Shown here one piece after another: positions 1 through 54,726 of a DNA stretch of 64,000 bases. Under the pieces are notes generated by a model. It did not search any database and was not told where the DNA came from. It saw only the letters and a program-made list of their open reading frames with translations. Positions within the stretch are counted from its first letter, which is position 1, and each line of letters opens with the position of its first letter. The stretch lies in the IMG/VR virus record IMGVR_UViG_3300031576_000001, positions 186,001 to 250,000 of that record; one strand, 5' to 3'. The position numbers were made by a program, and so were the translations under genes.

Positions 1-66
1 TTCAGACTCAGAAAGTACACCGAGGTAGCCTCTTCGCCTGAGAGGGGGTAGCCTTAGCCTTTAGCC

Positions 67-663
67 ATGAGATACCGAGTCCTCCTTGCTGTTACCCTCT
101 TCGCCCCCACCGTGCTCGCCCAAGACCCTGTGCAAACCGAGAACCCCGCGGCTTGTACGTCGGACAGTGTTTGCATACCCAGGGAGGATCTAGCTGTTTT
201 CGTTCAACTTTTGAAAGAGCGGCAGTGCTTGGTACGCACCAAGCCTGAGATTACCCTCTCGCCCATCCCGCTGGTCATTGACCGACAGGGTAGAGTCTAC
301 GGAGAGACAAAGACCACCCTACTCATACAATGGTGTAACTTTGAGATTACAGGGGGTGGGCCCGTCAAGATTGACGTGGCGGTACAGGATGAGCCCGTGC
401 CCCCACCACCCAAGCCGTCCCTCTGGCAGCCCGCGCTAAGGCTAGGCGTGGGCTACACAGTGCAAGCCTCTTGGGATGCTTTCTTGCTAGTCTCCCCTCT
501 GGCGTACCGGGGCGTGAGTCTCAACGGTCACGCTGGGGTGCGCTCCATAGGTGGCGGTTTGGGCTACGGTGTAACCTCTTACGGAGGCTTTTACGCTGGG
601 TACAGCTACAGCTACGAGGGTAAGCACGGGGCTACGCTGGGCGTATACGGCCGGCTCTGGTTA
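67..663 (+). CDS. Secreted / outer-membrane protein with C-terminal beta-strands
   Basis: N-terminal signal peptide MRYRVLLAVTLFAPTVLAQ, Pro-rich linker, Gly/Tyr-rich amphipathic strands. Ends GATLGVYGRLW (beta-signal-like) at in-frame TTA 661-663; the standard-code end is 717. Confidence 0.6.
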
Positions 664-674
664 GTCCACCCCGC

Positions 675-1298
675 TAAGAGGGTGCTACCGACTAGAAAAG
701 CGTCTTCACCAAGGTAGCGCTCGTACAAGGCGCTTAGCTCGTCGCAGGTTTGCTGGACTTGACTCTGGTAACTCTCGTCGATGCGACAACCCCAGAGGTA
801 CAGCGACTTGTAGAGACCGTCCCTTGTCACGTTGTGGAGTGTGTTAGCCAGCGCTCCGTGCCCCAAGGAGTTACCAACCCCACCAAAACCGCGGGTAACC
901 CCCCTACCCAGCGTCAACTCGCAACGGTACACGGCACCCTCTTTGGTGACCGTCACTTTGGAACCCAGCCTGTCCCTATCGCCCTTAGCCCAGAGGGTAG
1001 CCAGACTTATCGCCAGGTGCTCCATCCCAGGCACGTTTCTCTTTTTGTCCAAGAGAACCCGTCGCAGTCTGTTCCATTGGCTTTCACTGATACGGTCGGA
1101 CCAGAAGTTGTCTGCATAAAACCTGTCCCCCAGGTGCTCAAGGAACGCCTCTCGGTAGGACGCCCCGTTGGTTTTCCGCACCGGACCCTCTGCAAACCGA
1201 GCCGTGAGCGAGAAAAGCCCGTTTCGTTCCTGGCAGGTTAGCTGCCAGTCCCTCTTGACGTTGTTTATCACGATGGCTGTGCTCAAGTAATCCAGCAT
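675..1298 (-). CDS. Hypothetical protein
   Basis: ORF 612..1316. ATG at 1298; the first in-frame TTA (675-677) removes the overlap with the convergent gene. Confidence 0.6.
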
Positions 1299-1339
1299 GG
1301 CGTGTGGGGTCTCCAAAAGGGGTTCTGCACGGCTTTGCC

Positions 1340-1657
1340 ATGGTGGTACACCTTTTCCCGGCAGCTAGGGCTGTGCAACGCCGTATCGTAGCAAGATGGG
1401 TAGACAAGGGCACGCGAAAGCTGTCACGAGAGGTATACCGTCGCATCGGGGAAGACCCGCAAAGCGCTCAGTACCTCTCCGGGCTTCTACGGCGTCAAGC
1501 TGGTGACGTAGTGTCACTCCCCCCCTACGACCCCGCCCCGTTCAAGGAGATCGTAGACACTTGCCTCATGGTGACTGACCGTGACCCGGCGCGACTAAGA
1601 GACCTTGGATCAGCCTTGGACAGCCTGGCGCAAGCTGGGGCTAAAGCTACCGGGTGA
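1340..1657 (+). CDS. Hypothetical protein with RIVARW leader-like motif
   Basis: ORF fills the gap between two minus-strand genes; N-terminal QRRIVARW resembles the RVAxRY motif. Confidence 0.5.
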   Translation: MVVHLFPAARAVQRRIVARWVDKGTRKLSREVYRRIGEDPQSAQYLSGLLRRQAGDVVSLPPYDPAPFKEIVDTCLMVTDRDPARLRDLGSALDSLAQAGAKATG

Positions 1658-1702
1658 CAGCGGTGACGGGTGACAGCACGGTTTGCGGTATCTGCCGCGA
1701 GC

Positions 1703-2911
1703 TAAGCTCCAGATGTAGCTGAGGAGCCGGAAGAACATGCGCGAGACAAAGCCCTCTTCCTCGACGGGGCTTGGCGTCACGGGCGAGGGGGCGTCGTACA
1801 CGACCGGGGGTTCCTCTTCGGGTTCAGTCTGGACGCTGGGTTCCGTGGTCGTCACGCTCGGGGCAACCAAGGTGACGTGGCTCACGTAGAGTTTGCCGTC
1901 CCTACGGACCTCTTTGTTGGACACGGCGGCACCGAGGCGGGTACCGATGATGTGCGGGTGCGTACCGAAATGTGACGCCATACCCTCGACCGTGCTACCC
2001 TTCTCGCCCAGCGTGGAGAGGTAGGCAACGAGGTCATTCTTGGTGGGCGTGGGGAGTACGACGCCCGGGAGGTGACAGACGCCCGACGTGACCACGATGG
2101 TGCCCTTTTCGGTCAACGATTGTACCGCCGAGAGGTAATCGTTGCCGCACACGCCGAGGACAGCGACCGAGGAAGGCTGCTTGGTGATGAGGTTAAGCAC
2201 GTTGCACTCCGTCTTGGTCATGACCGGCTCACCCTTCGGGTCCCTCGTCGGGCTGGCGACGGTGAGGGACCACAGTTTGCCCTCGACGGTGACCTGACCT
2301 TCACGCTGCATGGCTCGCAGTTCCGTGAGGACGACGGCGCGGGCGCGGTGGACGCACTTGTTGATCTGGATCACGGAGAGGGCGTATGGCTGCGCCATGG
2401 TCAGCGCTTCCGTGATCTTGGTACGGAGCCACGCTGGTTTGGTGGCCGCCTTGGGCGCAGAAGTCTTTGGGCTCACGGAAGGCGCCGGCTTCTTGGGTGC
2501 TTCGGGCTTCCAGCCGATCCGACCGTTCCGCACGAGGAGACCCTTCAAGACCAGCAGCGTGGTGGCGACATACCGCTGGCTCTGGGTCGCCAGGGGTGCC
2601 TTGTTGAGGACGCGCACCTTGCCACCCACCCAAGCCAGCACGGTCAGCTCGTTGGGGGTGAGGTAGGGGGCGGGTACCCGGTCACCCTTGCTGCGGTAGT
2701 ACTCGGCAAGTTGGTCCAGGGTACACTCTCCCTTCTCCCGCCTGCGGTGCGACACCCCGTCATAGGTGCAGGGGATGCCCTCCTTGTGGAGGTTGTAGAC
2801 GAGGGTGAGCAGCGGGGCGCTGTCCGCGATCAAGGTTACCGGCCTCTCCTGGGGGGGCGCCTCGGTCCCTGGGGTGATGTCGTGGATGATGTGTGTGCGG
2901 GGGTTGTCCAT
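1703..2911 (-). CDS. Hypothetical protein, probable tandem winged-helix DNA-binding domains
   Basis: Repeated wHTH-like units (e.g. LSVIQINKCVHRARAVVLTELRAMQREGQVTVEGKLW). ATG 2911 lies 11 nt from GGTGTA; ends at TTA 1703-1705 (standard end 1610). Confidence 0.55.
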
Positions 2912-2922
2912 GCCTTGTTCTG

Positions 2923-2949
2923 TACACCATCGCTCCATTAAAAGGTGTA
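2923..2949. promoter_or_regulatory. Back-to-back divergent GGTGTA promoter elements
   Basis: TACACC 2923-2928 is 11 nt from the minus-strand ATG 2911; GGTGTA 2944-2949 is 12 nt from ATG 2962. Confidence 0.6.
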
Positions 2950-2961
2950 GGTTACCCTGGC

Positions 2962-5900
2962 ATGACTGAGAAACCGTCCGTGTACGACAGGCTCAAGCTA
3001 GCCAGGCAAAACCCGCAGTTCAGCCTGAAACCTACCCCCACCCTCACTGTTGCTGTCACCCCTACTTGTGAGCAGAAAGCCGCCGTTACCCTTCGTCCGT
3101 ACCAAGCCGTGGGCGCCTATCACCTCTTGGTGCAACCACGGATGGTCCTCGGGGATTGCTGCGGCTCCGGCAAGTGCGTCACGGAGGACACCCTTCTCCG
3201 TACCGACCGGGGCTGGCTACCCATAGGGGCACTGGCACCCCCCCAAGAGGTAGACGAGGGATTTGCCTCGTTTACCCAGGTACCCCCCGCAGTCTTGGAC
3301 GGCATGAACCTGACCCCACCTAAGAGGTTCTACCACGGGGGACTACAGGCGTGCCTCACGGTCACGACCGCTTACGGTTACCGTGTCACTGGAACCAAGG
3401 CTCACCCCGTTCTGGTCTGGCGGGACGGCTCCCACCAGTTCGTACCCCTTGGGGAACTAGAGCCTACAACGGACTACCTCTGCGTGGATCGTACCCCCGT
3501 ACCCTTTCCCCCCGACCCGGCGCTACCTGCCCCGGTACAGAAGCACCTCCAGGCGCCGACGCACCTTGACCCGGATCTTGCCTCTCTCCTGGGTTTTTGC
3601 GTGGCAGAGGGACACCTGAACGGTACCAGTTTGCGCCTGCGCGTCTCCTCTCCTTTTAAGAGGGGTGTGGTAGCCAGGCTCATGGACCGCCTCTTTGGGT
3701 GGCGTGAGCCTGGCTACCACCCCCAAGAGATCCGAATCTGTCGCAGGGGCGTGGTCCGTTTCCTAGAGGCTTGTGGGTTGGATTTGACCTGTAATCAAGA
3801 CCGAGTGGTCCCCTGGTCTGTCTTGCAGGGGAGCCAGGCGTCGGTGTCTGCCTTCCTCGCTGCTATTTTCGAGGGTAAGGCCAGTATCAGCCCCGAGGGG
3901 AGGATTGAGCTACGTACCTCTTCGCGCCCGCTAGCTCAGACGTTGCAAGTGATGCTGCTAGGGTATGGCATTGTGTCGAGTCTGCGTGAGAAGACCGCCA
4001 TACACGCCAGCAAGTACAGCTTGAAGATCGGCGGACCCTCGTCGCGCATTTTCCGAGATGAAATTGGGTTTTTGTCCTTTGAGAAGCAAGACTACCTCCG
4101 GGCAAAGACCAACCGAGGGGAGCATTGCAACCGCGACCTTGTGCCTGGCTGCGAGGGGCGCCTCCCTGAGTTGGTCGCCCTTCTACGCGAGAGAGACCCC
4201 CAGTGGCTCAACAAGAACGTGGTACTCAGAACCCGTGTTCAAACGATAAAGACCGGGAAGAGTCACCCCTCTTATGCCTTCCTCGACCGATTCTTGGCTG
4301 AGTGCCGGGCTCATGGGTTGCAGGACACGGAAAGCTACATCGAGCTAGAGAGTCGGGTGGAGGCTCACTACTTCTACGACCGGATCGAGACGGTAACGCC
4401 GGGGACCGCGGACGTGGTGGACCTGGAAATGCCCGACCCGTGTCACTCCTTCGTGGGTAACGGGCTGGTGTGTCACAACACGGTGCAAACGGTGGCGGCG
4501 CTGTCTTACCTGTGGGACCGCCTAGAGCCCACCCACAAGGTCATCGTGGTCTGCCCCAAGTCCGCCCTCTACCAGTGGCAAAGTGAAGTCGCCAGGTTCA
4601 CAGCGGGCGTTACCGTGTACGTAGCCTCCGGTCCAAACCGCAAGAAAGCCTACGAGGCGTTCTTCTCTGCGGACCCTACCAAGAGCAAGTCTCTTTTGCT
4701 GGTAGGGTACGCCTCGCTAGCTCGGGACTGGCACCAAGGCGCAGGCTCCGTCAAGGTCAACGGTAAGCTCACGGTCACGCAGGGCTACCTGGAGGGTCTG
4801 GTCACCAAAGCCGTTACGGCTTACCCCCTCTCTTTGGTGCTTGATGAGTGTTTTGAGTACCACACCCCCGTCTTGCTCGCTGATGGCACAAAGCAGCTTA
4901 TTGGGCAGATCGCAACCAATAAGTTGGCTGTGCGTGTGCTGTCGTGGGACTTCAGTACAGGGCAAGTCGTACAAAAGAATGTGATCGGCTGGTACCGGCG
5001 TCCTCTGCACTCTAAAGGTTCACTGTTGCGTGTGGACTTTCGGTTTGCAGGTACAGTCAATGTTACAAAGAATCATAACTTCTACCGCACCAACGGAGAG
5101 AAAGTACCAGCGGTTAAACTTAAGGTGGGAACCAAAACCGCCGCCTATCTGTGCAACACCCCTTCCGACGTGCAAGCGCAAGTGGTGTACGGTGGACTCC
5201 TTGGGGATGCTTCAGTAGCAGGGCGAAAGACCCTGCTATGGGGGATCGTGTTTGGGCACAGCTCAAAACAAAAGGAGTACCTCCAGTTCAAGAAGACAGT
5301 TTTGCAAAGTCTGGGTGTGTCAGAGGACACGCACCACCAAACAGAGTACCAAACCGGAGAACAGCAAATGGTGCATTTCCGTTTGAACGGAAATGCCGCG
5401 ATAACCTCAAAGCTATGTGACGCAGGAATTTGGTCTCAGGATTGCAAAACCATAACTGCGTCATTCCTTGACATGGTGAACCCCTGGGGACTCGCTATCT
5501 GGTATGGGGACGACGGTAGCCTGTCCACATTTACTAGGTCGGATGGGAGTAAGCGCTACAACATAACCCTCCATACAGAGGGTTATCACCGGTTTGAGGT
5601 GGAATTGCTTGCAGGTTGGCTCCGGTGGCGATGGGGGGTGTCAGCGTTGGTGAAGATTAGAAAGAACAAGAGGTCTGCTTGCAAACCGTATTACGTGCTA
5701 TACTTGCCTCACGAAGCGGCTCAGAACTTTCTGAACTTGCTTCCTGGTGCCTTGCCTGGGGTAGCTTACAAGTTTCCTGGTAAGAAGGTCATCGATCCTG
5801 CAATTCTTGACTTGACCCCTAAAGCGTCAATTGTGGTGGATGAAGTGATTTCCGTCTCAACGTGCCTCCCCCCTGTTAACCCCAAGCTGAAGACACAGTT

Positions 5901-7050
5901 TGTTTACGACCTGGAGGTGGAGGGTACTCACAATTACTTTGCCAACGGCGCGCTTGTTTCCAACTGCACCGCTGTGAAGAACCCTCAGACCAAAACCCAT
6001 GAGGTCTGCAAGCAGCTAGCCGGACAAGCCAAGAGGGCTTACGGGTTGACGGCCACCCTCTTGCGCAACTCACTCATGGATGGGTACGGGATCTACAAGG
6101 TCATTCTCCCTGACCTCTTTCGCAACAAAACCCGGTTCATGGAGGACTATTGTGTAACCCGCACCATGTTTCTGGGGCGTAAGCAGGTGCCCCTCATCGT
6201 GGGGTACAAGAACCTCTCCGTATTTCGCAGCACGATTGACCCGTACTTTCTGGGGCGTCGCAAGGAGGACATATCCAAAGACCTACCCGTGCTCACCTCA
6301 CGCGATGTCGAGGTCACCCTGTCCAGCGAAGAGGCTACCAAGTACGACGAGGCGTTGACGGGCGTACTGGACTTGATGAGCGGGGAGCGCAGGGATTACA
6401 CGGAAACCGTGGCCATGACCTCTTTGCTTTACTGCCAGCAAATTGCTAACAGCCTGGCTCTCATTGACGCTGACCCTACAGGTTGCACGCTAGCGGTTTC
6501 CTCCAAAGAGGAGGCTCTCATTGACCTCTTGACCGAAGGGCTCGACGGAGAGAAGGTCATTGTGTACACCCGCTTTGAGAAGGGTATCGAGCGTCTACGC
6601 GCTCTCCTCCAGAAAGCCGGAGTCAAGACCACGCGCATCACGGGCAAGGAGAAAGACCACGAGAGGCAGAAGAACCGGCTAGCCTTCCAAGAGGGGGACA
6701 CGTCGGTCATTGTCATCACGGACGCCGCCAGCGAGGCACTTAACCTCCAAGCCGCTGCCGCCATGGTCTTCTTTGACTCCCCGTGGTCCTGGGGGCATCT
6801 CGTGCAGCTTATTGGCCGGATGGTGCGTATCGGTTCCCCTCACCGGGGGGTTGTGGTGTATCACCTCCTGGCTACGCTGCCTGGCAAGAAAAAGAAGACG
6901 ATTGACCATTACGTGGTAGACACGCTACGCCGCAAGAAAGGACTGATTGACCAAGTGATCGGGGAAGCTGCCGTGGGCGCCTTGGTTTTCGAGGGTGACA
7001 TGGGGGTCGTGCATGACCTCATGGGGAAGATCCGTGACGACAGCCTGTGA
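2962..7050 (+). CDS. SNF2-family helicase with two inteins
   Basis: LRPYQ, Walker A GDCCGSGK|T, VVCPKS, Walker B LVLDE|CT, LTATLLRN, C-terminal EALNLQAA and QLIGRMVRIG. Confidence 0.9.
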   Translation: MTEKPSVYDRLKLARQNPQFSLKPTPTLTVAVTPTCEQKAAVTLRPYQAVGAYHLLVQPRMVLGDCCGSGKCVTEDTLLRTDRGWLPIGALAPPQEVDEGFASFTQVPPAVLDGMNLTPPKRFYHGGLQACLTVTTAYGYRVTGTKAHPVLVWRDGSHQFVPLGELEPTTDYLCVDRTPVPFPPDPALPAPVQKHLQAPTHLDPDLASLLGFCVAEGHLNGTSLRLRVSSPFKRGVVARLMDRLFGWREPGYHPQEIRICRRGVVRFLEACGLDLTCNQDRVVPWSVLQGSQASVSAFLAAIFEGKASISPEGRIELRTSSRPLAQTLQVMLLGYGIVSSLREKTAIHASKYSLKIGGPSSRIFRDEIGFLSFEKQDYLRAKTNRGEHCNRDLVPGCEGRLPELVALLRERDPQWLNKNVVLRTRVQTIKTGKSHPSYAFLDRFLAECRAHGLQDTESYIELESRVEAHYFYDRIETVTPGTADVVDLEMPDPCHSFVGNGLVCHNTVQTVAALSYLWDRLEPTHKVIVVCPKSALYQWQSEVARFTAGVTVYVASGPNRKKAYEAFFSADPTKSKSLLLVGYASLARDWHQGAGSVKVNGKLTVTQGYLEGLVTKAVTAYPLSLVLDECFEYHTPVLLADGTKQLIGQIATNKLAVRVLSWDFSTGQVVQKNVIGWYRRPLHSKGSLLRVDFRFAGTVNVTKNHNFYRTNGEKVPAVKLKVGTKTAAYLCNTPSDVQAQVVYGGLLGDASVAGRKTLLWGIVFGHSSKQKEYLQFKKTVLQSLGVSEDTHHQTEYQTGEQQMVHFRLNGNAAITSKLCDAGIWSQDCKTITASFLDMVNPWGLAIWYGDDGSLSTFTRSDGSKRYNITLHTEGYHRFEVELLAGWLRWRWGVSALVKIRKNKRSACKPYYVLYLPHEAAQNFLNLLPGALPGVAYKFPGKKVIDPAILDLTPKASIVVDEVISVSTCLPPVNPKLKTQFVYDLEVEGTHNYFANGALVSNCTAVKNPQTKTHEVCKQLAGQAKRAYGLTATLLRNSLMDGYGIYKVILPDLFRNKTRFMEDYCVTRTMFLGRKQVPLIVGYKNLSVFRSTIDPYFLGRRKEDISKDLPVLTSRDVEVTLSSEEATKYDEALTGVLDLMSGERRDYTETVAMTSLLYCQQIANSLALIDADPTGCTLAVSSKEEALIDLLTEGLDGEKVIVYTRFEKGIERLRALLQKAGVKTTRITGKEKDHERQKNRLAFQEGDTSVIVITDAASEALNLQAAAAMVFFDSPWSWGHLVQLIGRMVRIGSPHRGVVVYHLLATLPGKKKKTIDHYVVDTLRRKKGLIDQVIGEAAVGALVFEGDMGVVHDLMGKIRDDSL
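3175..4479 (+). mobile_element. Intein 1 in helicase Walker A, LAGLIDADG-type endonuclease
   Basis: Starts CVTEDT after GSGK and ends VCHN before T; TKAHP block; LLGFCVAEGH and FLAAIFEGKA motifs. Confidence 0.9.
4849..5964 (+). mobile_element. Intein 2 in helicase Walker B, LAGLIDADG-type endonuclease
   Basis: Starts CFEYHT after LDE and ends LVSN before C; VYDLEVEGTHNYFANG, GGLLGDAS and LAIWYGDDGS; lower GC than flanks. Confidence 0.9.
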
Positions 7051-18985: not shown

Positions 18986-20089
18986 ATGACCTACCCGAAC
19001 CTGGACGATAGATTTCAGCCGATCTACACCAAGCCCCTCACGGGGATTCCCACGGCAAAGCGTGCGCGAGCGGACGCTTCTAGCGCGGGGCTAGCGGGTC
19101 CAGCGCTAGACAGGGTGGTGAGGTTGGAGGGTGCAGAGAGGCACTGGGCGAGAACGACCGCTACCCTGGAAATGGCATTGTGGGCTGCTTTCTCGGTACG
19201 CCACCGGGACTGGCAAGAGGACACGGAGCACCGCAAGGGGTTTGCACGAGACGCGGCGAGCCTGGTCAGCGGGGGAGCCTCTGAGTTGCACTTCCTCACG
19301 GACGTGCTGGCGCTAGCCTGGGCGCACCTCACGTTGGACATCAACTACCACGGCGGCGGGAACGAGGACCAACCCGCCGTGCGCCTGCCCCCGTTCCGCT
19401 CTCTTGGGCTGGGCAAGTGGAACAAGATCGACACGGAGAGCTACGCCAGTGCCGGCAAGTCAGCCCTGGTCATCCTGGGCGAAGAGCTTGACGCTGAAGC
19501 CGAGAGGTACGCCCAAGAGGCGAGCGGGGCGACCGTTACTCAGTTTCAAGCCAGGGACGGTGAGTTGTACGTAGAGGTACGGGTAGGCTCCGTGCTTGCC
19601 GTGTCCACGCACGTTCCCCTGGCGTGGTACAGGGGGAGCGACCTCTGGGGGATTGACCCCTGGGTTGACCGTCTTTGCCTCGCCAAGCTGTCAGCCTGTC
19701 TCAAGTCTGGTTTCAAAGAGGGGATGTTGCCCTGGGCTACGTTGTACAACCGGCTGCAAGCCAGGCGCCGTGTCTTCCGGGCTGCACATTTCTGGTATGA
19801 CTTGCTGCAAAAGTTCCCCGAGTACATGGAGCCCGCCCGTACTGCTGAGCCTGGTTCGCCCCTTCACGCGGTGTGGCAGCTAGCGTGTTTGCCTTACGAG
19901 AGTGACCTCCTGGCGGCGGACCTGTGGCTCAAGAGTGTAGCCGAGGAGGGCGCTTCCATGTCACAAGCGCTAGCCTGGCTAGAGTCCCTCCACCACCTAG
20001 AGGGGGCTCTTGTCCCCCCGGACAGGGTAACCGACCATGACCTCAGTTTCCTCTCCAGCGCGTCTCCCTGCGAGGGTAGCCCAGCGTTA
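18986..20089 (+). CDS. Hypothetical protein
   Basis: GGTGTA-N10-ATG; first in-frame TTA at 20087-20089 (standard end 20146). Confidence 0.6.
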
Positions 20090-20798
20090 CGCTGCAAAGA
20101 CGAAAGCCAAAGCGCCGCCGTCAGCCCCGGAGCCCACGGGGATTGAGAAGGCAATCAAGGACGCCTTTGCTTCTCTGGGGGGCGAGTTGGGCTCTACGCT
20201 GGCTAGTGAGTTCGTCTCTGTTCTTGACAGCAAGCTAGAGAGCGCCCGTGAGCGTGTGCTCAACTTGTCTGCGAAGTCCTGGGCGGTGGCACGCAAGGGG
20301 ACAGAGACCTCCTCTTGGGAATCTGACGAGACAGGATACCACTACTCGGTCGAGCTAGACTACCCAGAGGTTGTAACGGCTACCGTGAAGGCGCCGTTGT
20401 CGTGGGACACACTAGTCACTGAGGTTGCCCAAGGGGTAGACACAAAGCACCGTGGTCTCGCCGTAGAAGTTATGCGTACCCCGGCAGTAAAAGCAGCTTG
20501 CCTCAAGGTGGCGGAAGAGCGGGTGGCGCTACAGACCATTGAAGCAGGAGAGCTACGGACCTCACCTCTGGGTGCGTCCGCGGTAGAGTTCGCTGAGGAC
20601 AAGTCACAAAGGTCCATCGACTCCGACGACGACCCCAACTACGAGATACCCTGGGGTAAGCACGAGATTACGGTACACGGGGGCAGCGTGACCGCAAAGC
20701 TAACCTCCTCTGGCGCGCTGGACGTACTCTTTACCGCGAGCGTCGGGCTAGAGGTTGAGTTTTTCTGGCCCGGTGACCGTGGGTACAACGATTGGTTA
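20037..20798 (+). CDS. RVAxRY-leader protein (putative virion internal protein)
   Basis: N-terminal LPARVAQRYAAK; ends at TTA 20796-20798. Confidence 0.6.
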
Positions 20799-20843
20799 CT
20801 TAGAGGCTCCCTGGCTTCTATCCCTCACAAACAGGGAGAAGCC

Positions 20844-21998
20844 ATGCCCAAAGACGTTGACCGCTACCACGACGAAGTATTGAAAAGCAACCCTGACTAC
20901 TCAGAGGCTCAAGCATGGGCTACGGCGTGGTCAATTTTCTGCCGGAATAAAGACCCTGGGTCGGAGCACTGCAAGAAGCCCACGTCGGAGTACCTCTCAG
21001 GCAAAAATGCGGGGCTACTGGTCAGGGTCGCCTCTGCCTACCTCGACAAGCACGCAGCGCAAGACCCTGAGTATACCTCGCACCTCAAGCACTTCCTGGT
21101 AGCCCTGGACAAGGAGGTCAACAAGCTGGCGGGTCACCGAAGCGAGCCTTTGACGGTGACGACCAAGGACTTTGGTGGTGCGAGGGGTCTGCCGCGCGTC
21201 ATTGTCCAGGGACCGAAGGCACAGCACTACCTCTTCGTGGTCGAGAAAGGTAACCCCAAGAAAGCCTACGGGTGGCAAATTTCGCTGTGCGACGCAGAGA
21301 GCGGCGCCCCTCTGAAGGGTAAGAAGCCTGTGGGTACGCTGAACCCTCGCCCTGAGAAGCGCTGGGCAAAAGACCCCATTGGGTGGCACGACGCCTTTGC
21401 TAGCCTGCGGTCACTTGACCTTGACGCACTCTACGGCAAAGAGGACTTGACCGAGGAGGAGCTAGCCCCTGGGTCTACACGGTGGGACGCCCTTGAGGAG
21501 CTACCTCCCATGGAGACTGAGATTCCTGGGGACGACGCTAGCTGGTCTGACCTGGAACAAGTCAAGAATGCAGCAAAAGCTAAACCGTCTAGCAAGTGGA
21601 AAGACCTTGGCAGCTACAGTCGCGAGGCCACAGCGGTTGAAGAGGCTATTGCTAGTCTGGACGCGGTAGAGAAGGAAGTGAGCCAGGGTATCGAAGAGGC
21701 TACCTCCAAGCTCAGACCTACGTGGGTTGGGGACGCAAAGAAAGTGGTGGGTGAGGTTTACAACAAGCTCCAAGCTGCCTTGAGGAGTGCGGACTTGACG
21801 TTGGGGGCTATGGGTCCAGCACTCCGAAAGTTGCCCCTACACTCCAAGCTAACCCAAGAGGCTGTCGCCATGGTGTCTACTCTGGAGAGCGCGGTTACGC
21901 GGCTCACCGCAGTGCGAGCGGCTTTGAGTCGTGCCACGGTTGGGGACACCCCGGCGGTAGAAGCTGCTTTGGCAAAGACAAAAGCACTTCTAGGTTAG
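20844..21998 (+). CDS. Putative virion protein with ChaB-like N-terminal motif
   Basis: Has its own GGGAGAAGCC-ATG start; SEAQAWATAWS, LLVRVASAY, KNA/KHA sites. Confidence 0.55.
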   Translation: MPKDVDRYHDEVLKSNPDYSEAQAWATAWSIFCRNKDPGSEHCKKPTSEYLSGKNAGLLVRVASAYLDKHAAQDPEYTSHLKHFLVALDKEVNKLAGHRSEPLTVTTKDFGGARGLPRVIVQGPKAQHYLFVVEKGNPKKAYGWQISLCDAESGAPLKGKKPVGTLNPRPEKRWAKDPIGWHDAFASLRSLDLDALYGKEDLTEEELAPGSTRWDALEELPPMETEIPGDDASWSDLEQVKNAAKAKPSSKWKDLGSYSREATAVEEAIASLDAVEKEVSQGIEEATSKLRPTWVGDAKKVVGEVYNKLQAALRSADLTLGAMGPALRKLPLHSKLTQEAVAMVSTLESAVTRLTAVRAALSRATVGDTPAVEAALAKTKALLG

Positions 21999-38142: not shown

Positions 38143-38664
38143 ATGCCCAACTTGCGAGACGAGCAACACCGAAAGATAGGGTGGGTCGTGATCCTCCCTG
38201 ACGGGGCTTACGGGGAGGTAGTCTCCTGGGACAGGACTCTCCGGCTCGCCAAGGTGAAGACCCTCTCTGGGGTAACGGAGCACCCAGAGGAGGATTGCGT
38301 GACCTACGCTTACCCAGCGGAGGAGTACGCTGCTCTCAGCCTGCCCCCGGTAGCTACCGCCAAGAGGGGTACGGTGGTGAATGTCGAGGTACGGCGGTCG
38401 CCCCGGGTGGGCGTGGTTCAGCGTGACACACTCGCGCCTTACCAGGGGTGGGTCTATCGTGCGCCCCGAGGGTTGTACCTTCACCCCAACGTGAGGGTGC
38501 GTTTTGGTGAGACAGTGTGCGTGGTGTGGACCGATGGTTCGCTCACGTCCATGCTGGTACCCAAGAATTACGGAACTGTGGCGAGCAAGCGAGCGCTACG
38601 CGAGACAGCGGAAGCTACTGCCAGGAACGCCTCTTGGTGGGACGACAAGAAAGGTGAGTTTTAG
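38143..38664 (+). CDS. Hypothetical protein
   Basis: ATG 38143; an in-frame TTA lies just upstream of this start. Confidence 0.55.
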   Translation: MPNLRDEQHRKIGWVVILPDGAYGEVVSWDRTLRLAKVKTLSGVTEHPEEDCVTYAYPAEEYAALSLPPVATAKRGTVVNVEVRRSPRVGVVQRDTLAPYQGWVYRAPRGLYLHPNVRVRFGETVCVVWTDGSLTSMLVPKNYGTVASKRALRETAEATARNASWWDDKKGEF

Positions 38665-39551
38665 TGCAACCACAAGCCAAGGTCATCCTCGATAGCGTCA
38701 CTCCGGGGGGTTATCGCCTCACCACGTTGGAGGTCACCTACCACCGATTCGTGCTCGCAGAATTGAATACCCACAGAACCCTGTCGCGTAACTCGGGTAG
38801 CTCGCGGGCTATCCCTCTCAGTAAGACGCTGGACTTTGTGCGTAACAACACGGCGTTGCCGGTTCACTGGGGTAAGAACCAGAAGGGGATGGTAGCCGAA
38901 GAGGAGATTAGCCCAGAGGATCAACGCCAGGCGGCTACCGTGTGGATGCGAACCATGAGCGCGGCGGCTAGTGGGTCAGAACAGCTAGCGGCTCTTGGGG
39001 TACACAAGCAGCTAACTAACCGACTCATCGAGCCCTACTCCTGGCAACGCAGCATTTTCACGGCGACCGAGTGGGATAACTTCCTGGGGCTACGGGTGGA
39101 CAAGGACGCTCAGCCCGAGTTTTACGCTCTGGCGCTAGCTATACAGCAAGCCCTGGTTACCAGCACCCCTACGCTTCTCTCAGAAGGTCAGTGGCACCTT
39201 CCCTACGTGGACGGAGCTACCCGCGCCGCCTTCTCTGAGGCGGACTGCATCAAGGTCAGCGCCGGACGGTGCGCCAAGGTCTCGTACCTCACCCACGAGA
39301 CCAGTGCCGACCCTTGCGATGACATCGACCGGTGCAACCGTATTCTTGAGGCTGGACACTTCTCGCCCGCCGAGCACCAAGCCATGAGCTTGACCAAAGA
39401 GGGTTGGGTAGAGTACGCCACCGAAGCGTTCTGCCGGTTTCTCTCTGACCGTATACCGCTGGGTAACCTGCAAGGGTGGGTTCAGTACCGCAAGCTACTC
39501 ACGGACGAGCACGACTTCTCACGGGTCAAAGCCAAGAGGCGGGTTGGCTTA
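38664..39551 (+). CDS. thyX: FAD-dependent thymidylate synthase
   Basis: RFVLAELNTHRTLSRNSGSSRAIP, HKQLTNR, AQPEF, HFSPAEH. Ends at TTA 39549-39551. Confidence 0.85.
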
Positions 39552-40136
39552 GTGCCTGTATCCTTGCCCCTCTTGGAACGTGAGGAAGCCCGGCTCGTCG
39601 CCAGCCGGAGCTTGCTTGGTAAGCCTAGCCCGGGTGTGTCGTGTCGCCGGGGGTGCTCCTCTTGCTGCTACCGCCCCGTGTACGCCACCGTCCTAGAGGG
39701 CGCCGCCGTGTACCGCTCTCTTAAAAGGAGGGGCATGGGTGACCTTGTACCCCCCCTCAAAGCCCACGGGGAGAACCTACGTAGCCAAGACCCCCTAGTA
39801 TGGTTCTTGTCGCGGCAATCCTGTCCCCTCCTCACGAGCACCCGGGAGTGCTCTGTGTACGACGGGCGCCCCATGGCGTGCCGCGCACATGAGGTCACTT
39901 CTGACCCGTACCTGTGTGACCCGCACCAGCTATCAAAAGGATTGTCTGTTGTTGACCGAGAGGCGGATCTACAGGGGTTTGCCAAGCAGGCGCGCAGCGG
40001 GGAGCTAAGGCTAGGATGGCGTCTACCCACGCTCCCTCTTGGGTTGGCGGTCTGGCTAGCCGGCGAGGTTATCGAGGGTCGTGTCCCTACGGAAGAGGTG
40101 CCCCAGAGGGTGTTCCTCTTGCTGGCTAGGGGCTGA
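39552..40136 (+). CDS. YkgJ/FliB-like Cys-cluster protein
   Basis: CRRGCSSCC...CPLL....CSVYDGRPMACR; GTG immediately after the TTA. Confidence 0.75.
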   Translation: MPVSLPLLEREEARLVASRSLLGKPSPGVSCRRGCSSCCYRPVYATVLEGAAVYRSLKRRGMGDLVPPLKAHGENLRSQDPLVWFLSRQSCPLLTSTRECSVYDGRPMACRAHEVTSDPYLCDPHQLSKGLSVVDREADLQGFAKQARSGELRLGWRLPTLPLGLAVWLAGEVIEGRVPTEEVPQRVFLLLARG

Positions 40137-42681: not shown

Positions 42682-42866
42682 CAGCCCTCAGCACAAAACT
42701 GCTCACCTTGGAAGAGGCGATTGAGCACTGCCAGGAGAACGCTGTCGGAGACACCCCCTGTGCCAGGAACCACCGCCAGCTAGCCGAATGGCTTCTTGAG
42801 CTACAAGCTAGGCGCTACAACAAGGCCCCCACCGTCGCGTGGGGTCAGGGTCAGGGTCAGGTATTA
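42678..42866 (+). CDS. Hypothetical protein
   Basis: TLEEAIEHC...HRQLAEWL. TTA 42864-42866 is shared with the TAA of the convergent gene. Confidence 0.55.
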
Positions 42867-43307
42867 GAGGGTACCGTAGGCTTCCTCTTCGCTCACTTCC
42901 CGACCAAGCTCGCGGAAACACGCCTTGAGCCGGGCGTTTAGAGCGCTCGCCCGCCGCCGCACCTGAGCGTAGGAAAGCTCACCGTCACAAGAAAGATTTT
43001 CAGGGCTTAGCTGGCAGTACAACCCCAGGATCTCCCGCTTGACCTCAGCCTCGCTCCGGGGCGCCTTCGGAGCAGAAGGCTCCGTGGCGGGAGGGGGCGC
43101 TGTGGTGGCACCCTGCGGGGCGAGAGTCACCAGCGAGCGCGCCACGTTCCACACGGACCCCACGGCGTAAGCCTTGAACGTGCCGCGAGACTCCAACTGC
43201 CTGACCTTGATGGTCTTGCTGTTGACCTTGACGAACACCCCGAGGGTCTTCTCCCCGTTGGCGCGTCCGAAGAAAACCTTGTCACCAGCCTTGATATTCT
43301 GTTCCAT
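42864..43307 (-). CDS. Hypothetical protein
   Basis: GGAGG site then ATG (MEQNIK); LSPENLSCDGE motif. Confidence 0.65.
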   Translation of the reverse strand: MEQNIKAGDKVFFGRANGEKTLGVFVKVNSKTIKVRQLESRGTFKAYAVGSVWNVARSLVTLAPQGATTAPPPATEPSAPKAPRSEAEVKREILGLYCQLSPENLSCDGELSYAQVRRRASALNARLKACFRELGREVSEEEAYGTL

Positions 43308-43355
43308 GGTCACTTGCCTCCGTGTCGTGCGTCGTTGTTGAAAAGGCAGCCTGCC

Positions 43356-43763
43356 TAACGTCCAGTAGGGGGGTTTAGCGTTACCCTTACGTGTGCCCGT
43401 GATCTCGACGAATTTCACGGTTTTCTCGACGCGGGCGCCGTTCTTCCGAGAGAACTGAACCACCACCCCCGTGCCGGTGACACGCTGCACCGTGCCGTTG
43501 TACGTGCCGCACCCCCCGGGGCAGGGGTAAGCCCACGACACCACCGCACCGGGGTAGAGGTAGACGCCGCGGGACCAGCAAAACTCGACCCACTGGTCCA
43601 GGGCGTCCTTGTGTGAGCCGTGGGCGGGCATCACGGGGACCGCAAACAAGCCTTCCTTGTCGCGGCTGTCCACGCAGAGACCTTCCACCACGGAGAGGGT
43701 GAATTCCTTATGGGTGCCGCGGTTACCGACGATGACGAGGTTTTTGAGGTTGAGGGGGCGCAT
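43356..43763 (-). CDS. Hypothetical protein
   Basis: Starts at a CGTA-class promoter; ends at in-frame TTA 43356-43358. Confidence 0.6.
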
Positions 43764-52276: not shown

Positions 52277-52326
52277 GAGAGGTAGCGTACACCGCCGCCC
52301 CCTGACCCGCACCCATTAAACGCCAA

Positions 52327-52358
52327 GAGGCTCCCCTGTAGTCACACAAGGGAGCCTC
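52327..52358 (-). terminator. Stem-loop downstream of the vWA gene
   Basis: GAGGCTCCC 52327-52335 pairs with GGGAGCCTC 52350-52358, 24 nt after the TTA. Confidence 0.55.
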
Positions 52359-52382
52359 CCCGGTCGCGGTACCGGCAAGGGG

Positions 52383-54665
52383 TAAGATGGCGATCTTGAC
52401 CTCGGAGAGGGCGAACGTGGCTTGTACGTCCCCCAGCTTGGCGGTCTTCAACGTCAGCTTGCAGTTGTCCAGGGAGGTAAACTCCGAGAACCATACCTGC
52501 CCAAGCACGGTGGCGAGCTTGATCTGTGCGATTTCCCTGAGAAGCTCCCTCGTCTCACGGGTCGCCTCCTCGGCGCGGGCGCGTAGCCAGGTCAACCCTT
52601 CCTCGGGGTACTGGAGGGCAACGTCCTTGATGGCAGGCTCCATCAGCAAGGCGCCAGCGTTACCCTTACCCTTGGCCAGCTTCTCCACAGCCTCTTTGAG
52701 GGAGGGCAACGCTGAGAGCCCCTTGAGACTCACGGTAAGCTCGCTTCCGATGTAATGGTCCGTGGACTCCTTGGTCAGCGCCTTGGGTGCGAACCCGCCG
52801 TAATCCGTGATCCCTTGCTCTTTCAACCAAGATGAAACCTCTTCGCCGTGGATAGCGCTGTACCCCAGGCTGGTCTTGCCCCCACCGTAGTCCTTGAGGT
52901 ACCCCTGGTAGACCTTCTGCCGGGCGCGAGCCTCGGTAAGCTGCATGACCTTCTCGCCCAACGTCTTGGCTGAGAGGGTCTTGGTCATGGAGCGGTTGAC
53001 CACGGCAAGGGAACCCAGGTCAAGAACCGCCTCGACCTCAAAGTCCAGCTTGGTCTCGGAGAGAACCGGTACCCCTTTGGCTTTCAGGTTGGCTAGCGTC
53101 TCGTGCGAGACCTTGACCGGCAAGCTCTTGACATTGACCAGACCGTCACGGATGATGCTGTAGTTCCGGTGAATGTAAGTAGGGAACTTCTCGGGGAGGT
53201 TGCCCACCATGGACGGGGGGAGCCGCTTGGAAAGGTCCACGGTCCCCCACACCTTGACCTGTAGGCTCACGTTCGGGCGATCCTCGTTGTAAACGAGGTT
53301 TTCGATGGTCGAGCCCGCTTCCTTCTCAGCCTCATCGGGCACGAACGTGAGAGGCTCTGGCTTGCTGGCGACAATGCTTGCAATCTTCTCTTGCAAGGTT
53401 TTGACAGCGGCTACCGTGATCTTGGGCTTGCTCATCTGAGCTTGCAACGAGGCGATCTCAGCCGTCTCCTCGTCCGTGAACCGCGAAGAGGCATCCTCCC
53501 GTGCGCGCCCGATCCGGGTGTACTTCCACTCGGGGTGGTACGGCAGAACCCGGTTGGTGCTGTCCGAGGCGAGGATACTGAGCACGTCCAGCACGGTCAC
53601 GGCGTTGTCGTCGGGTACCTTGGTGGGGTCGTAACCCTCTTGGTAGCGAGCGCCCGCGTCAAAGGCTGCCTTGGTCACGTCCGCCTGAAACTCGCTGTAC
53701 TTCTGCTTTCCGAAGCACTTGGCAAACCGGGTAATGAAGCGCACGTCACCCGTGAACTTCAACAAGGGGAGCACCACGTCGGGCTGCATCCGGCTTGAGA
53801 ACAGGCTAATCGCCGCGTACACGGGGGGCAGTACCGCCTCGTCAGGCTTCCCCGTGGTCGGCGCACCCCCCTTGCTCGCAGAGAGGTAGTACACGGTGGT
53901 CACGTCGGGGGGTACCGTGACGGAGCCCCCCTCTACGCCAAACGTCAGCACGTCACCCTGAGAGAGGGCAAAGGCCACGTTACCTACCGCGTCCCCGGAG
54001 AGGGTCAGCGTCTTCTTGGGGGTCGCCGCGACCTTGCGCCCGAAAACCTTGGTGATTTGTGGCTCGTAAGCCGAGAAGTCCTCCGTGAAGAGGAGGGCAC
54101 CCCCCAGCTTGGCTGCCATCGCAGAGAGGAGGGAGCGGTCAGCGTAAAACCCCCACTCGACCACGGCGGCACTATCCGCCTCAATCTTGCCCAGGGTAGC
54201 CAGGATCTTCTCTCGGCTCCCCTGGTTGTCGTAACCGTCGCTGAGGAACAGGAGGGCTACTGCCTCCCCGGGGTGCGCCTTCCTTAGCCTGGCGATCACG
54301 CGCGCCGCTTCCTCCAAGGGGTCTTGGAAGCCTGTGAGCCCTACCGGCTTGAGCCAGCGGTCCACCGCAGCGTTGACCTTGGCCAGGTCTTTGAGGTTAC
54401 GTAGCGCCACGTCCTCGAAGATGACCCCACACTCCCCCCTGCCGGAGAACCAGATCAGGCTCACGGTGTCCTTCTCGCCCACCAGCGAGGGAAACTTGCC
54501 CTTGATCTGCGCTCGCATGTCGGGCAGCGCACCGCTCATTGAGCCGCTGCAATCGACAACCAGCAAGTGATTCGTCGGGGGCGCTTTCGCTGGGGTGCTG
54601 TCTTTGCCCGCGCTAAAGGCTACCAGCGCGAGTCCGTTACCAAGAGGCGTTGTTGTCGGTTTCAT
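52383..54665 (-). CDS. vWA-domain protein
   Basis: MIDAS VVDCSGSM, GLT, FLSDGYDN. The only in-frame TTA follows EVKIAI (standard end 52194). Confidence 0.85.
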
Positions 54666-54726
54666 CGTTGGGCTAAGGTACACCCCAAACGGTAGGACCG
54701 TAGACCCAAACTATGTCCTACCCTCG

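What the first reader, a model, noticed from the sequence alone, without database searches (positions are those of the whole stretch)
612..717. Two convergent genes both end on TTA, exposing an outer-membrane beta-signal
Under code 11 these ORFs overlap by 106 nt. With TTA as stop the plus gene ends at 661-663 and the minus gene at 675-677, leaving an 11-nt gap. Neither TTA is the complement of the other gene's in-frame stop. The plus protein then ends GATLGVYGRLW, with alternating hydrophobic residues and a terminal aromatic as expected for BAM substrates, matching its signal peptide. This is independent support for the code change and a candidate phage outer-membrane (receptor-blocking or lysis) protein.
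Basis: partly seen in the sequence, partly recalled or inferred. Interest (0 to 1): 0.6.

Follow-up and report, generated by a model that had tools for sequence, protein, structure and literature searches.

The report
Giant phage uses TTA as stop
In this 323-kb phage genome, and at least four related giant-phage contigs, the leucine codon TTA ends genes like a fourth stop codon; read that way, the two facing genes at 612-717 stop 11 bases apart, and one is a secreted protein whose true end looks like an outer-membrane insertion signal.

Summary
The + ORF 67..717 has an in-frame TTA at 661-663. The - ORF 1316..612 has one at 677..675. The table-11 overlap is 106 nt; with TTA as stop the gap is 11 nt.

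Genome-wide, TTA behaves as a terminator:
- 46% of in-frame TTAs lie in the last 30 codons of ORFs, against 7-15% for every other codon.
- ORF cores hold 18 TTAs in 61,365 codons, against 939 in the two off frames.
- Coding signal drops after TTA as it does after TAA, TAG and TGA.

Homologues agree. In the + protein's family, 30 of 35 standard-code members end on an aromatic residue (last or next to last) at or next to W198. The only four with extensions all read TGG-TTA there. The LVHPAKR tail is not conserved. For the vWA gene in the window, 117 of 120 homologues end exactly before its TTA.

Five contigs from different samples share the trait; two relatives of similar G+C do not.

I found no report of a sense-to-stop change outside organelles. 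The mechanism is unknown: no phage tRNA-Leu(UAA) and no release-factor gene were found.

The outer-membrane reading of the + protein is plausible but unproven. The - gene is an ORFan, so its TTA end rests on genome-wide evidence.

The parts
67..663 (+). Gene for a 198-aa secreted protein of a conserved phage family, ending on TTA
   Evidence: ORF under table 23. Coding score is 0.31 in the body and -0.36 in the tail. About 40 homologues were found, and they end at W198 or the residue before it.
67..123 (+). Signal-peptide-like N-terminus (residues 1-19, MRYR + hydrophobic run + VLA|QD), no lipobox
   Evidence: Read from the translation. The same layout appears in the homologues. No signal-peptide predictor was available.
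424..660 (+). C-terminal beta domain (residues 120-198): six amphipathic Gly/aromatic strands ending ...GVYGRLW
   Evidence: AlphaFold2 pLDDT is 94-98 over this part. The best structural match is a designed six-stranded barrel, Z 9.9; outer-membrane barrels score Z 4-6.
661..663 (+). TTA that ends the + gene
   Evidence: It is in frame. Homologues end here; four genomes have TGG-TTA at this column.
664..674 (.). 11-nt intergenic gap between the two TTA stops
   Evidence: No significant hairpin (z -0.99) and no terminator-like site.
664..717 (+). Table-11 read-through tail of the + ORF (LVHPAKR...), not coding
   Evidence: The tail is not conserved in any homologue. Its coding score is -0.36. 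In the 216-aa model it is a coil with pLDDT 58-65.
675..677 (-). TTA that ends the - gene (TAA on the + strand, out of frame for the + gene)
675..1316 (-). ORFan gene, 213 aa from TTG 1316 (207 aa from ATG 1298), ending ...GSTL then TTA
   Evidence: Coding score is 0.37 and GC3 is 0.70, against -0.7 in the other frames. No homologue was found in 5.8 billion proteins, in the relatives or in the Atlas.
612..674 (-). Table-11 read-through tail of the - ORF, not coding
   Evidence: Coding score is -0.39 over 20 codons. It is antisense to the conserved C-terminus of the + gene.
1703..2938 (-). Next gene (411 aa, ORFan), also ending on TTA; this removes a 48-nt table-11 overlap with 1304..1657
   Evidence: Coding score is 0.46 in the body and -0.35 in the tail.
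52383..54683 (-). vWA-domain gene ending on TTA at 52383-52385: the best homology anchor for the code in this window
   Evidence: The PHROG profile ends (736/736) three residues before the TTA. Of 120 homologues, 117 end at the column before it, and the three others carry TTA there. A hairpin follows the TTA in this phage and in the relative.
38664..39551 (+). ThyX gene ending on TTA at 39549-39551, followed in frame by a separate CxxCxxCC-domain gene (39552..40136)
   Evidence: Pfam and PHROG domains lie on either side of the TTA. The relative's ThyX ends on TGA at the aligned position.

Best explanation
The window belongs to a 322,633-bp phage genome in which TTA (UUA) is not read as leucine. 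It ends translation alongside TAA, TAG and TGA, which is formally the same table as NCBI code 23.

At the finding, both convergent genes stop on TTA: 67..663 on the + strand and 1316..675 on the - strand. They are separated by 11 nt and do not overlap by 106 nt.

The + gene encodes a 198-aa exported protein of a conserved giant-phage family. It has a signal peptide, a Cys-bridged N-terminal alpha/beta domain, a proline linker and a six-strand amphipathic beta domain. Its last residue is an aromatic in a beta-signal-like motif. It is most likely inserted in the host outer membrane, possibly as an oligomer or together with the N-terminal hairpin. The - gene is a lineage-specific ORFan of unknown function.

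Shown: termination at TTA at the level of gene ends, by statistics, coding signal, and homologue and orthologue ends in five contigs.

Inferred: the mechanism. The most likely picture is that no tRNA reads UUA in the infected cell, since the phage supplies tRNA-Leu GAG, UAG, CAG and CAA but not UAA. The empty A site would then be resolved by a release or rescue factor that has not been identified. Whether the host shares the code is unknown.
For: Genome-wide position. 45.5% of in-frame TTAs fall in the last 30 codons of stop-to-stop ORFs and 24% in the first 30. Every other codon has 7-15% in the last 30.

Depletion in frame. ORF cores hold 18 TTAs in 61,365 codons, against 558 and 381 in the two off frames.

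Coding signal. The coding score and GC3 fall after TTA just as they do after TAA, TAG and TGA. As first stops the counts are TGA 124, TTA 112, TAG 53 and TAA 48. In the window 22 of 82 genes end on TTA.

Orthologues. The comparison was with a 205-kb relative (G001:C1, about 45-60% protein identity). It gave 53 reciprocal-best pairs with a TTA after the end of the alignment. Their C-terminal lengths agree within 2 residues in 4 pairs under table 11 and in 32 under table 23; the median difference falls from 23 to 1. TTA replaces TGA, TAA or TAG at the same end in 38 pairs.

vWA gene. 117 of 120 homologues end at the column before the window's TTA. The three exceptions all have TTA there.

The + gene's family. 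Homologues end at or next to W198. The four that extend (window, G001:C1, L026, L028) read TGG-TTA.

Relatives of similar G+C (L030, L031) show no in-frame depletion of TTA.

tRNAs. Of 39 phage tRNAs, four are Leu and none has anticodon UAA.

Assembly. An independent assembly gives the same sequence.

Protein. AlphaFold2 mean pLDDT is 87.9, and 94-98 over strands 120-196. The tail of the 216-aa version is a coil at pLDDT 58-65. 30 of 35 family members end with an aromatic at the last or next-to-last position.
Against: There is no protein-level or ribosome-level evidence; everything is inferred from DNA.

No release-factor (RF-1, PCRF) or peptidyl-tRNA hydrolase domain was found in the record, so the agent of termination is unknown. 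The record is estimated to be 68% complete and the host is unknown.

The phage tRNA set also lacks Cys and Trp, so the missing Leu(UAA) is only suggestive.

There is one exception. An in-frame TTA at genome 305307-305309 lies inside a conserved domain and aligns with CTG-Leu in the relative.

The - gene has no homologue, so its end cannot be tested directly.

For the outer-membrane claim: the window protein has no Pfam or PHROG match. Only 1 of 38 family members touches OMP_b-brl, weakly (E 4e-4). The model has six strands rather than 8 or more. Foldseek found nothing at E <= 0.001.
Confidence: 0.85

Rival explanations
1. Standard code. TTA is simply a very rare leucine codon, the two ORFs truly overlap by 106 nt, and both proteins carry the extra tails (216 and 234 aa).
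For: Table 11 gives uninterrupted ORFs. Public gene calls list the 216-aa and 228-aa versions. One in-frame TTA aligns with a Leu codon in a relative.
Against: A rare codon would not pile up in the last 30 codons; TTA does so at 46%, against 7-15% for the others. The tails lose coding signal. They are not conserved in any homologue. Orthologue lengths agree only if TTA is a stop. CTA (325) and TTG (348) are common in the window while TTA is 45, mostly at ORF ends. A relative at 51.7% G+C shows the same depletion.
Confidence: 0.03
2. TTA is not a true stop codon recognised by a release factor. It is an unassigned ('hungry') codon at which ribosomes stall. The nascent chain would be freed by a rescue pathway, or the ribosome would slip +1 onto a nearby TAG or TAA. 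In this reading the trait is imposed by the phage (for example by removing the host tRNA-Leu(UAA)) on a host with the standard code.
For: No class-I release factor was found in the phage. The phage carries 38 elongator tRNAs but none for UUA. 48 of 112 stop-TTAs are followed by G, which gives TAG in the +1 frame. Bacterial contigs binned with the relative use TTA as an ordinary sense codon.
Against: More than half of stop-TTAs are followed by C or T, so a +1 TAG or TAA cannot be general. By general knowledge, tmRNA rescue tags proteins for degradation, which would be costly for a third of the phage's genes. No ArfB-type (RF-1) domain was found. The bin is not evidence of who the host is.
Confidence: 0.3
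3. Sequencing, assembly or base-modification artefact: true TAA, TGA or TAG stops are miscalled as TTA.
For: Single-sample metagenome at modest depth (about 12x).
Against: An independent assembly is identical. The same TTA positions occur in five contigs from different samples and pipelines: IMG/VR, NCBI, Logan, JGI and ENA. Off-frame TTA is abundant, so the effect is specific to reading frame, which no sequencing error is.
Confidence: 0.01
4. The + protein ends at W198 but is a soluble periplasmic or secreted small beta-barrel protein, not an outer-membrane protein. On this view the terminal aromatic residue is structural rather than a BAM signal.
For: The best structural match is a soluble designed six-stranded barrel (9xzt_A, Z 9.9, rmsd 2.4 over 79 residues). 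No natural outer-membrane barrel with six strands is known to me. There is no Pfam outer-membrane-protein hit for the window protein. The conserved cysteines suggest an oxidised periplasmic domain.
Against: The strands alternate hydrophobic/aromatic with Gly/Ser/Thr, the reverse of a soluble barrel with a hydrophobic core (read). The family ending GxxFxF / LxLW / SLSFN is typical of beta-signals. Weak fold and profile hits are almost all outer-membrane barrels: OmpW, KdgM, CarO, NspA, PagL, OprH, OMP_b-brl.
Confidence: 0.4

Closest known systems
NCBI genetic code 23 (Thraustochytrium aureum mitochondria): TTA = stop in addition to TAA, TAG and TGA
   Same: The codon table is the same. TTA terminates while TAA, TAG and TGA stay stops. 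No tRNA-Leu(UAA) is encoded in the genome itself.
   Different: That code belongs to a small organelle genome with its own ribosomes and a nucleus-encoded release factor. Here it is a clade of giant double-stranded-DNA phages that must use a bacterial host's ribosomes. I found no report of it outside organelles.
Other sense-to-stop reassignments in green-algal mitochondria (UCA and UCG in Sphaeropleales, code 22; UUR in Pycnococcus), linked to altered mtRF1a (PMC6821328)
   Same: The direction of change (sense to stop) is the same. A cognate tRNA is lacking, and codon disappearance probably came before capture.
   Different: In those cases changes in the release factor correlate with the new stops. 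Here no release-factor gene is present in the phage record, and the host factor is unknown.
Stop-codon recoding in phages (TAG or TGA read as an amino acid; codes 15 and 4; crAss-like and Lak phages; bioRxiv 10.1101/2021.08.26.457843, PMC11210395)
   Same: This is a phage lineage whose code differs from the standard one. It has a large tRNA set that includes a suppressor-type tRNA(CUA). Standard gene callers mis-annotate it.
   Different: The direction is opposite: a sense codon becomes a stop. Table 11 therefore lengthens and fuses genes instead of fragmenting them. TAG still behaves as a stop here.
TTA/bldA control in Streptomyces (general knowledge)
   Same: UUA is nearly absent from coding sequence and depends on a single tRNA species.
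   Different: In Streptomyces TTA is still leucine, lies inside regulatory genes, and is not concentrated at gene ends.
Small outer-membrane beta-barrels with a C-terminal beta-signal (OmpX/Ail/Lom, OmpW, PagL, NspA, Pfam OMP_b-brl)
   Same: It has a signal peptide and amphipathic Gly/aromatic strands. The ending is G-x-x-aromatic-x-aromatic with the aromatic as last residue. Fold hits to these families are weak.
   Different: Only six C-terminal strands are modelled. There is no significant sequence or profile match. An extra disulfide-type N-terminal domain is present.

Membership tests
Four-stop code (table-23 type, TTA = stop) | In-frame TTA absent from conserved coding bodies but present at normal frequency off frame | tested here: met
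   18 TTAs in 61,365 core codons against 558 and 381 off frame. Across about 38,000 aligned residues of orthologues, real genes carry TTA only at the aligned ends, with one exception.
Four-stop code (table-23 type, TTA = stop) | Genes end at TTA where homologues with the standard code end | tested here: met
   vWA: 117 of 120 homologues end at that column. The + gene's family ends at or next to W198. Orthologue ends agree within 2 residues in 32 of 53 pairs, against 4 of 53 under table 11.
Four-stop code (table-23 type, TTA = stop) | TAA, TAG and TGA remain stops | tested here: met
   Coding signal drops after each of them. They interchange with each other and with TTA at orthologous ends.
Four-stop code (table-23 type, TTA = stop) | No tRNA able to read UUA in the translating system | tested here: inconclusive
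   The phage's 39 tRNAs include Leu GAG, UAG, CAG and CAA but not UAA. The host's tRNAs are unknown.
Four-stop code (table-23 type, TTA = stop) | A release factor that recognises UUA | not testable with these tools
   No RF-1, PCRF or Pth domain in the phage record. The host is unknown and biochemistry is needed.
Four-stop code (table-23 type, TTA = stop) | Proteins shown to end at TTA (peptides, ribosome footprints) | not testable with these tools
   The only runs that hold this sequence are DNA runs of one cave metagenome.
BAM-dependent outer-membrane beta-barrel protein | Cleavable Sec signal peptide | tested here: inconclusive
   MRYR + hydrophobic run + VLA|QD by inspection. The same layout appears across the family. 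No predictor was available.
BAM-dependent outer-membrane beta-barrel protein | C-terminal beta-signal ending in an aromatic residue | tested here: met
   The protein ends ...LGVYGRLW once TTA is read as stop. 30 of 35 homologues have F, W or Y at the last or next-to-last residue.
BAM-dependent outer-membrane beta-barrel protein | Closed transmembrane barrel of 8 or more strands, or an oligomeric barrel | tested here: inconclusive
   The model has six confident C-terminal strands plus an N-terminal hairpin, with pTM 0.53. The trimer test gave no verdict.
BAM-dependent outer-membrane beta-barrel protein | Sequence membership in a known outer-membrane-protein family | tested here: not met
   No Pfam or PHROG hit for the window protein. 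1 of 38 members hits OMP_b-brl at E 4e-4. The PDB profile search gave nothing below E 0.5.
Stop-to-sense recoded phage (codes 4 and 15) | In-frame TAG or TGA inside conserved genes | tested here: not met
   There is no coding signal after TAG or TGA. In-frame junctions are no more common for TAG than for the other stops. A tRNA(CUA) is nevertheless present.

The most novel reading that the evidence does not exclude
A clade of giant phages has evolved the first sense-to-stop codon reassignment known outside organelles. It imposes it on a host that uses the standard code, by leaving UUA without a reader (or by destroying the host's tRNA-Leu(UAA)) and ending translation there through a factor unrelated to RF1 and RF2. 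This would make phage messages and host messages mutually incompatible.
Probability: 0.3. Interest if true: 0.95.

Novelty: new variant of a known kind. Interest (0 to 1): 0.85.

Why it matters
All known code changes in phages and bacteria turn stops into sense codons or swap amino acids. Sense-to-stop changes are known only from a few mitochondria. A phage clade that ends about a third of its genes on a leucine codon raises a directly testable question. How does a bacterial ribosome terminate at UUA, and is this a host property or a phage takeover of translation?

It also has a practical side. Under table 11 these genomes are silently mis-annotated: extended C-termini, false gene overlaps and in-frame gene fusions such as ThyX with its neighbour. 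Current code-detection tools look for stop-to-sense changes and would miss it.

At this locus the corrected end exposes a conserved C-terminal aromatic motif. That turns a nameless ORF into a candidate phage-encoded outer-membrane protein.

Tried and rejected
- **+1 slip onto TAG or TAA.** Both TTAs at the finding are followed by G. Genome-wide, though, the next base is G in 48, C in 41, T in 19 and A in 4 of 112 cases, so the idea was rejected as a general rule. The lack of A reflects genome-wide rarity of TTAA.
- **TAG read as sense through the tRNA(CUA).** No support.
- **Close relatives by DNA or a single protein.** Nothing in the phage collection or the viral contigs.
- **Word-based protein search for the + protein.** It found only the protein itself. 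The exhaustive HMMER search was needed.
- **The - gene.** No homologue, no match in relatives or paralogue in its own genome, and an Atlas score of 0.77, which is uninformative.
- **Similarity of the P0125 tail (SAKRVL) to the window tail (PAKRVL).** The convergent gene is not shared, so I treat it as chance.
- **Apparent similarity of the vWA tails after the TTA.** Explained by G+C-rich hairpins in the intergenic region of both phages.
- **Terminator or hairpin at the 11-nt gap.** Not significant.
- **Structure and profile searches.** Foldseek against the PDB gave nothing at E <= 0.001. The PDB profile search gave nothing.
- **Complex prediction with three copies of residues 112-198.** No verdict; this is no evidence either way.
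- **Release-factor, PCRF and Pth domain searches of the phage.** Negative.
- **RF genes in the relative's bin.** They lie on contigs that use TTA as an ordinary sense codon. This says nothing about the host.

Full report
**Observation**

The window is bases 186001-250000 of a single 322,633-bp virus record with 58.6% G+C. Under table 11 the + ORF 67..717 (216 aa) and the - ORF 1316..612 (234 aa) overlap by 106 nt. The + ORF has an in-frame TTA at 661-663. The - ORF has one at 677..675. Read as stops, they give genes 67..663 (198 aa, ending ...GATLGVYGRLW) and 1316..675 (213 aa), separated by 11 nt. Neither TTA is the in-frame complement of the other gene's stop. An independent assembly of the same cave-metagenome reads is identical over window 1-3000.

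**Is TTA a stop in this genome?**

I tested this on the whole genome with stop-to-stop ORFs, which need no gene model.

- Position. Of 202 in-frame TTAs in 337 ORFs, 92 (45.5%) lie in the last 30 codons and 48 in the first 30. For all other 60 sense codons the share in the last 30 codons is 7-15% (binomial P about 1e-39).
- Depletion. In ORF cores TTA occurs 18 times in 61,365 codons, but 558 and 381 times in the two other frames (Fisher P about 4e-137). This is not a G+C effect: CTA and TTG are each used more than 300 times in the window.
- Coding signal. The coding score and GC3 (0.69 to 0.59) fall after TTA exactly as after TAA, TAG and TGA.
- Usage. As the first of four possible stops, TTA ends 112 of 337 ORFs, against TGA 124, TAG 53 and TAA 48. 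It ends 22 of 82 genes in the window.
- Convergent pairs. Those overlapping by more than 10 nt fall from 31 to 19. Five pairs, including this one, have TTA on both sides.

**Homologue ends**

- vWA gene (54683..52383, - strand). Ackermannviridae orthologues end one to two residues before it. Of the 120 best homologues, 117 end exactly at the column before it. The three exceptions (this phage, P0046 and P0113) all have TTA at that column.
- ThyX. This ORF is an in-frame fusion under table 11. The TTA at 39549-39551 separates the Thy1 domain from a CxxCxxCC-domain gene, and the relative's ThyX ends on TGA at the aligned position.
- A 205-kb relative (G001:C1, from NCBI assembly GCA_040400085.1). 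It shows the same TTA statistics. It gave 53 reciprocal-best pairs with a TTA after the end of the alignment. Their C-terminal lengths agree within two residues in 4 pairs under table 11 and in 32 under table 23. The median difference falls from 23 to 1. TTA stands opposite TGA, TAA or TAG in 38 pairs and opposite TTA in 15.
- Inside alignments of real genes, TTA appears only at the aligned ends.
- One exception. ORF 305121..305585 of the genome has a TTA inside a conserved domain, aligned with CTG-Leu in the relative. This could be a pseudogene, a restart, or residual leucine reading.

**Spread of the trait**

The trait is present in five contigs from different sources:
- the window's genome (IMG/VR, cave metagenome);
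- G001:C1 (NCBI);
- a 150-kb Logan contig (L026);
- a 458-kb JGI contig with 62.5% G+C (L028);
- a 35-kb ENA scaffold with 51.7% G+C (L035).

Two related giant-phage contigs of similar G+C (L030, L031) show no in-frame depletion. The change therefore marks a subclade.

**The + gene**

Word-based search found nothing. Exhaustive HMMER search found about 40 homologues of 170-250 aa. In the alignment the standard-code members end at the residue aligned with W198 or the one before. Of 35 such members, the last residue is F in 13, W in 6 and N (mostly ...SLSFN) in 12, and 30 have an aromatic at the last or next-to-last position. Only four members run on under table 11, and all four read TGG-TTA at that point. 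In G001 the TTA is followed at once by TGA.

AlphaFold2 with 38 sequences gives mean pLDDT 87.9. The model has:
- a signal-peptide-like N-terminus;
- a helix at 39-57, and strands at 61-64, 77-89 and 92-105, with nearly invariant C54, W89 and C90;
- a proline linker;
- six strands at 120-196 with pLDDT 94-98.

The 216-aa version has the same fold, and its tail is a coil at pLDDT 58-65.

The C-terminal domain best matches a designed six-stranded barrel (Z 9.9). Natural outer-membrane barrels (OmpW, KdgM, CarO, NspA, PagL, OprH) follow at Z 4-6. Atlas matches are weak (TM 0.31-0.42) and mostly outer-membrane-barrel families. One family member touches Pfam OMP_b-brl at E 4e-4. The strands alternate hydrophobic or aromatic residues with Gly, Ser or Thr.

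I rate outer-membrane insertion as the most likely location (about 0.55), but it is not shown. Roles in receptor blocking or lysis are untested.

**The - gene and the neighbourhood**

The - gene has a good coding score (0.37, against -0.7 in the other frames), and the score drops to -0.39 after its TTA. It has no homologue anywhere.

This gene, 1304..1657 (+) and 1703..2938 (-, also ending on TTA) lie between the + gene and an intein-bearing SNF2 helicase gene. In L028 the + gene's homologue directly abuts the SNF2 gene. In L026 it faces an unrelated convergent gene, and none of the three ORFans has a match in any relative. The three ORFans are therefore a lineage-specific insertion. The surrounding region is a replication module: SNF2, DnaB, family-A DNA polymerase, AAA ATPase, ThyX and type IB topoisomerase.

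**Mechanism**

What is shown is that genes end at TTA. How they end there is inferred.

The phage encodes 39 tRNAs. They include Leu GAG, UAG, CAG and CAA but not UAA; Cys and Trp are also missing. No RF-1, PCRF or peptidyl-tRNA hydrolase domain is present in the record.

My preferred reading is that UUA has no reader in the infected cell and is resolved by an unidentified release or rescue activity. Whether the host shares the code cannot be told. Bacterial contigs binned with the relative use TTA as an ordinary sense codon and carry ordinary RF genes, but binning does not identify a host.

**Comparison with what is known**

The table equals NCBI code 23, that of Thraustochytrium mitochondria. 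Other sense-to-stop changes are mitochondrial: UCA and UCG in Sphaeropleales and UUR in Pycnococcus, linked there to altered mtRF1a (PMC6821328). Known phage recoding goes the other way, from stop to sense (10.1101/2021.08.26.457843; PMC11210395). Five full-text searches found no report of TTA or any sense codon used as a stop in phages or bacteria.

**Verdict**

This locus adds an independent, homology-anchored case. The beta-signal idea is reasonable at family level but remains a hypothesis.

Noticed in passing
G000:C1:307803-307877 (- strand; outside the window): A 75-nt suppressor-type tRNA with anticodon CUA (ARAGORN labels it 'Pyl'). TAG nevertheless behaves as an ordinary stop in coding-signal and orthologue tests.
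   Followed up: partly
G000:C1:21209-31256 (outside the window): A cluster of 38 tRNA genes. Leu anticodons GAG, UAG, CAG and CAA are present and UAA is absent. There is also no tRNA for Cys or Trp.
   Followed up: partly
G000:C1:305307-305309, in ORF 305121..305585 (+; outside the window): The one in-frame TTA found inside a conserved protein domain. It aligns with CTG-Leu in the relative G001:C1, with conservation on both sides. It may be a pseudogene, a restart, or residual leucine reading.
   Followed up: partly
window 2962-7050 (+) and 31387-33942 (+): The SNF2 helicase gene carries two inteins (LAGLIDADG_3 at residues 295-369; Intein_splicing plus LAGLIDADG_2 at 646-1001). A DNA methylase gene carries a Hint/intein insert. 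In relative L028 the SNF2 gene has no intein but DnaB has one.
   Followed up: partly
window 675-2938: Three ORFan genes (675..1316 -, 1304..1657 +, 1703..2938 -) sit between the + gene and the SNF2 gene. They are absent from the relatives, and in L028 the two flanking genes are adjacent. This looks like a lineage-specific insertion.
   Followed up: partly
whole genome G000: Trp is the last residue of 11 of 112 genes that end on TTA, against 4 of 225 genes that end on standard stops (Fisher P 0.0014). TGG-TTA recurs, including at the finding. This is unexplained.
   Followed up: partly
whole genome G000: The palindrome TTAA is strongly avoided: 98 of 1,808 TTA trinucleotides are followed by A. 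This may be avoidance of a restriction site.
   Followed up: no
window 52290-52382 (- strand) and L003 12310-12370: A G+C-rich hairpin followed by a T-rich stretch lies just after the TTA stop of the vWA gene, in this phage and in the relative. It looks like an intrinsic terminator. Under table 11 it would lie inside the ORF.
   Followed up: partly
G001 contigs C4 and C5 (L019, L020): The first 20 kb of two further contigs in the relative's 5.1-Mb bin also show TTA concentrated at ORF ends. Contigs C2, C3 and C6-C10 do not. The bin seems to mix phage and bacterial contigs.
   Followed up: no
window 38664-40136 (+), 20037-21998 (+), 42864-43763 (-): Under table 11 these are single ORFs. Each is two genes in the same frame separated by one TTA: ThyX with a CxxCxxCC-domain gene, and two further pairs. 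Public gene calls therefore fuse them.
   Followed up: partly
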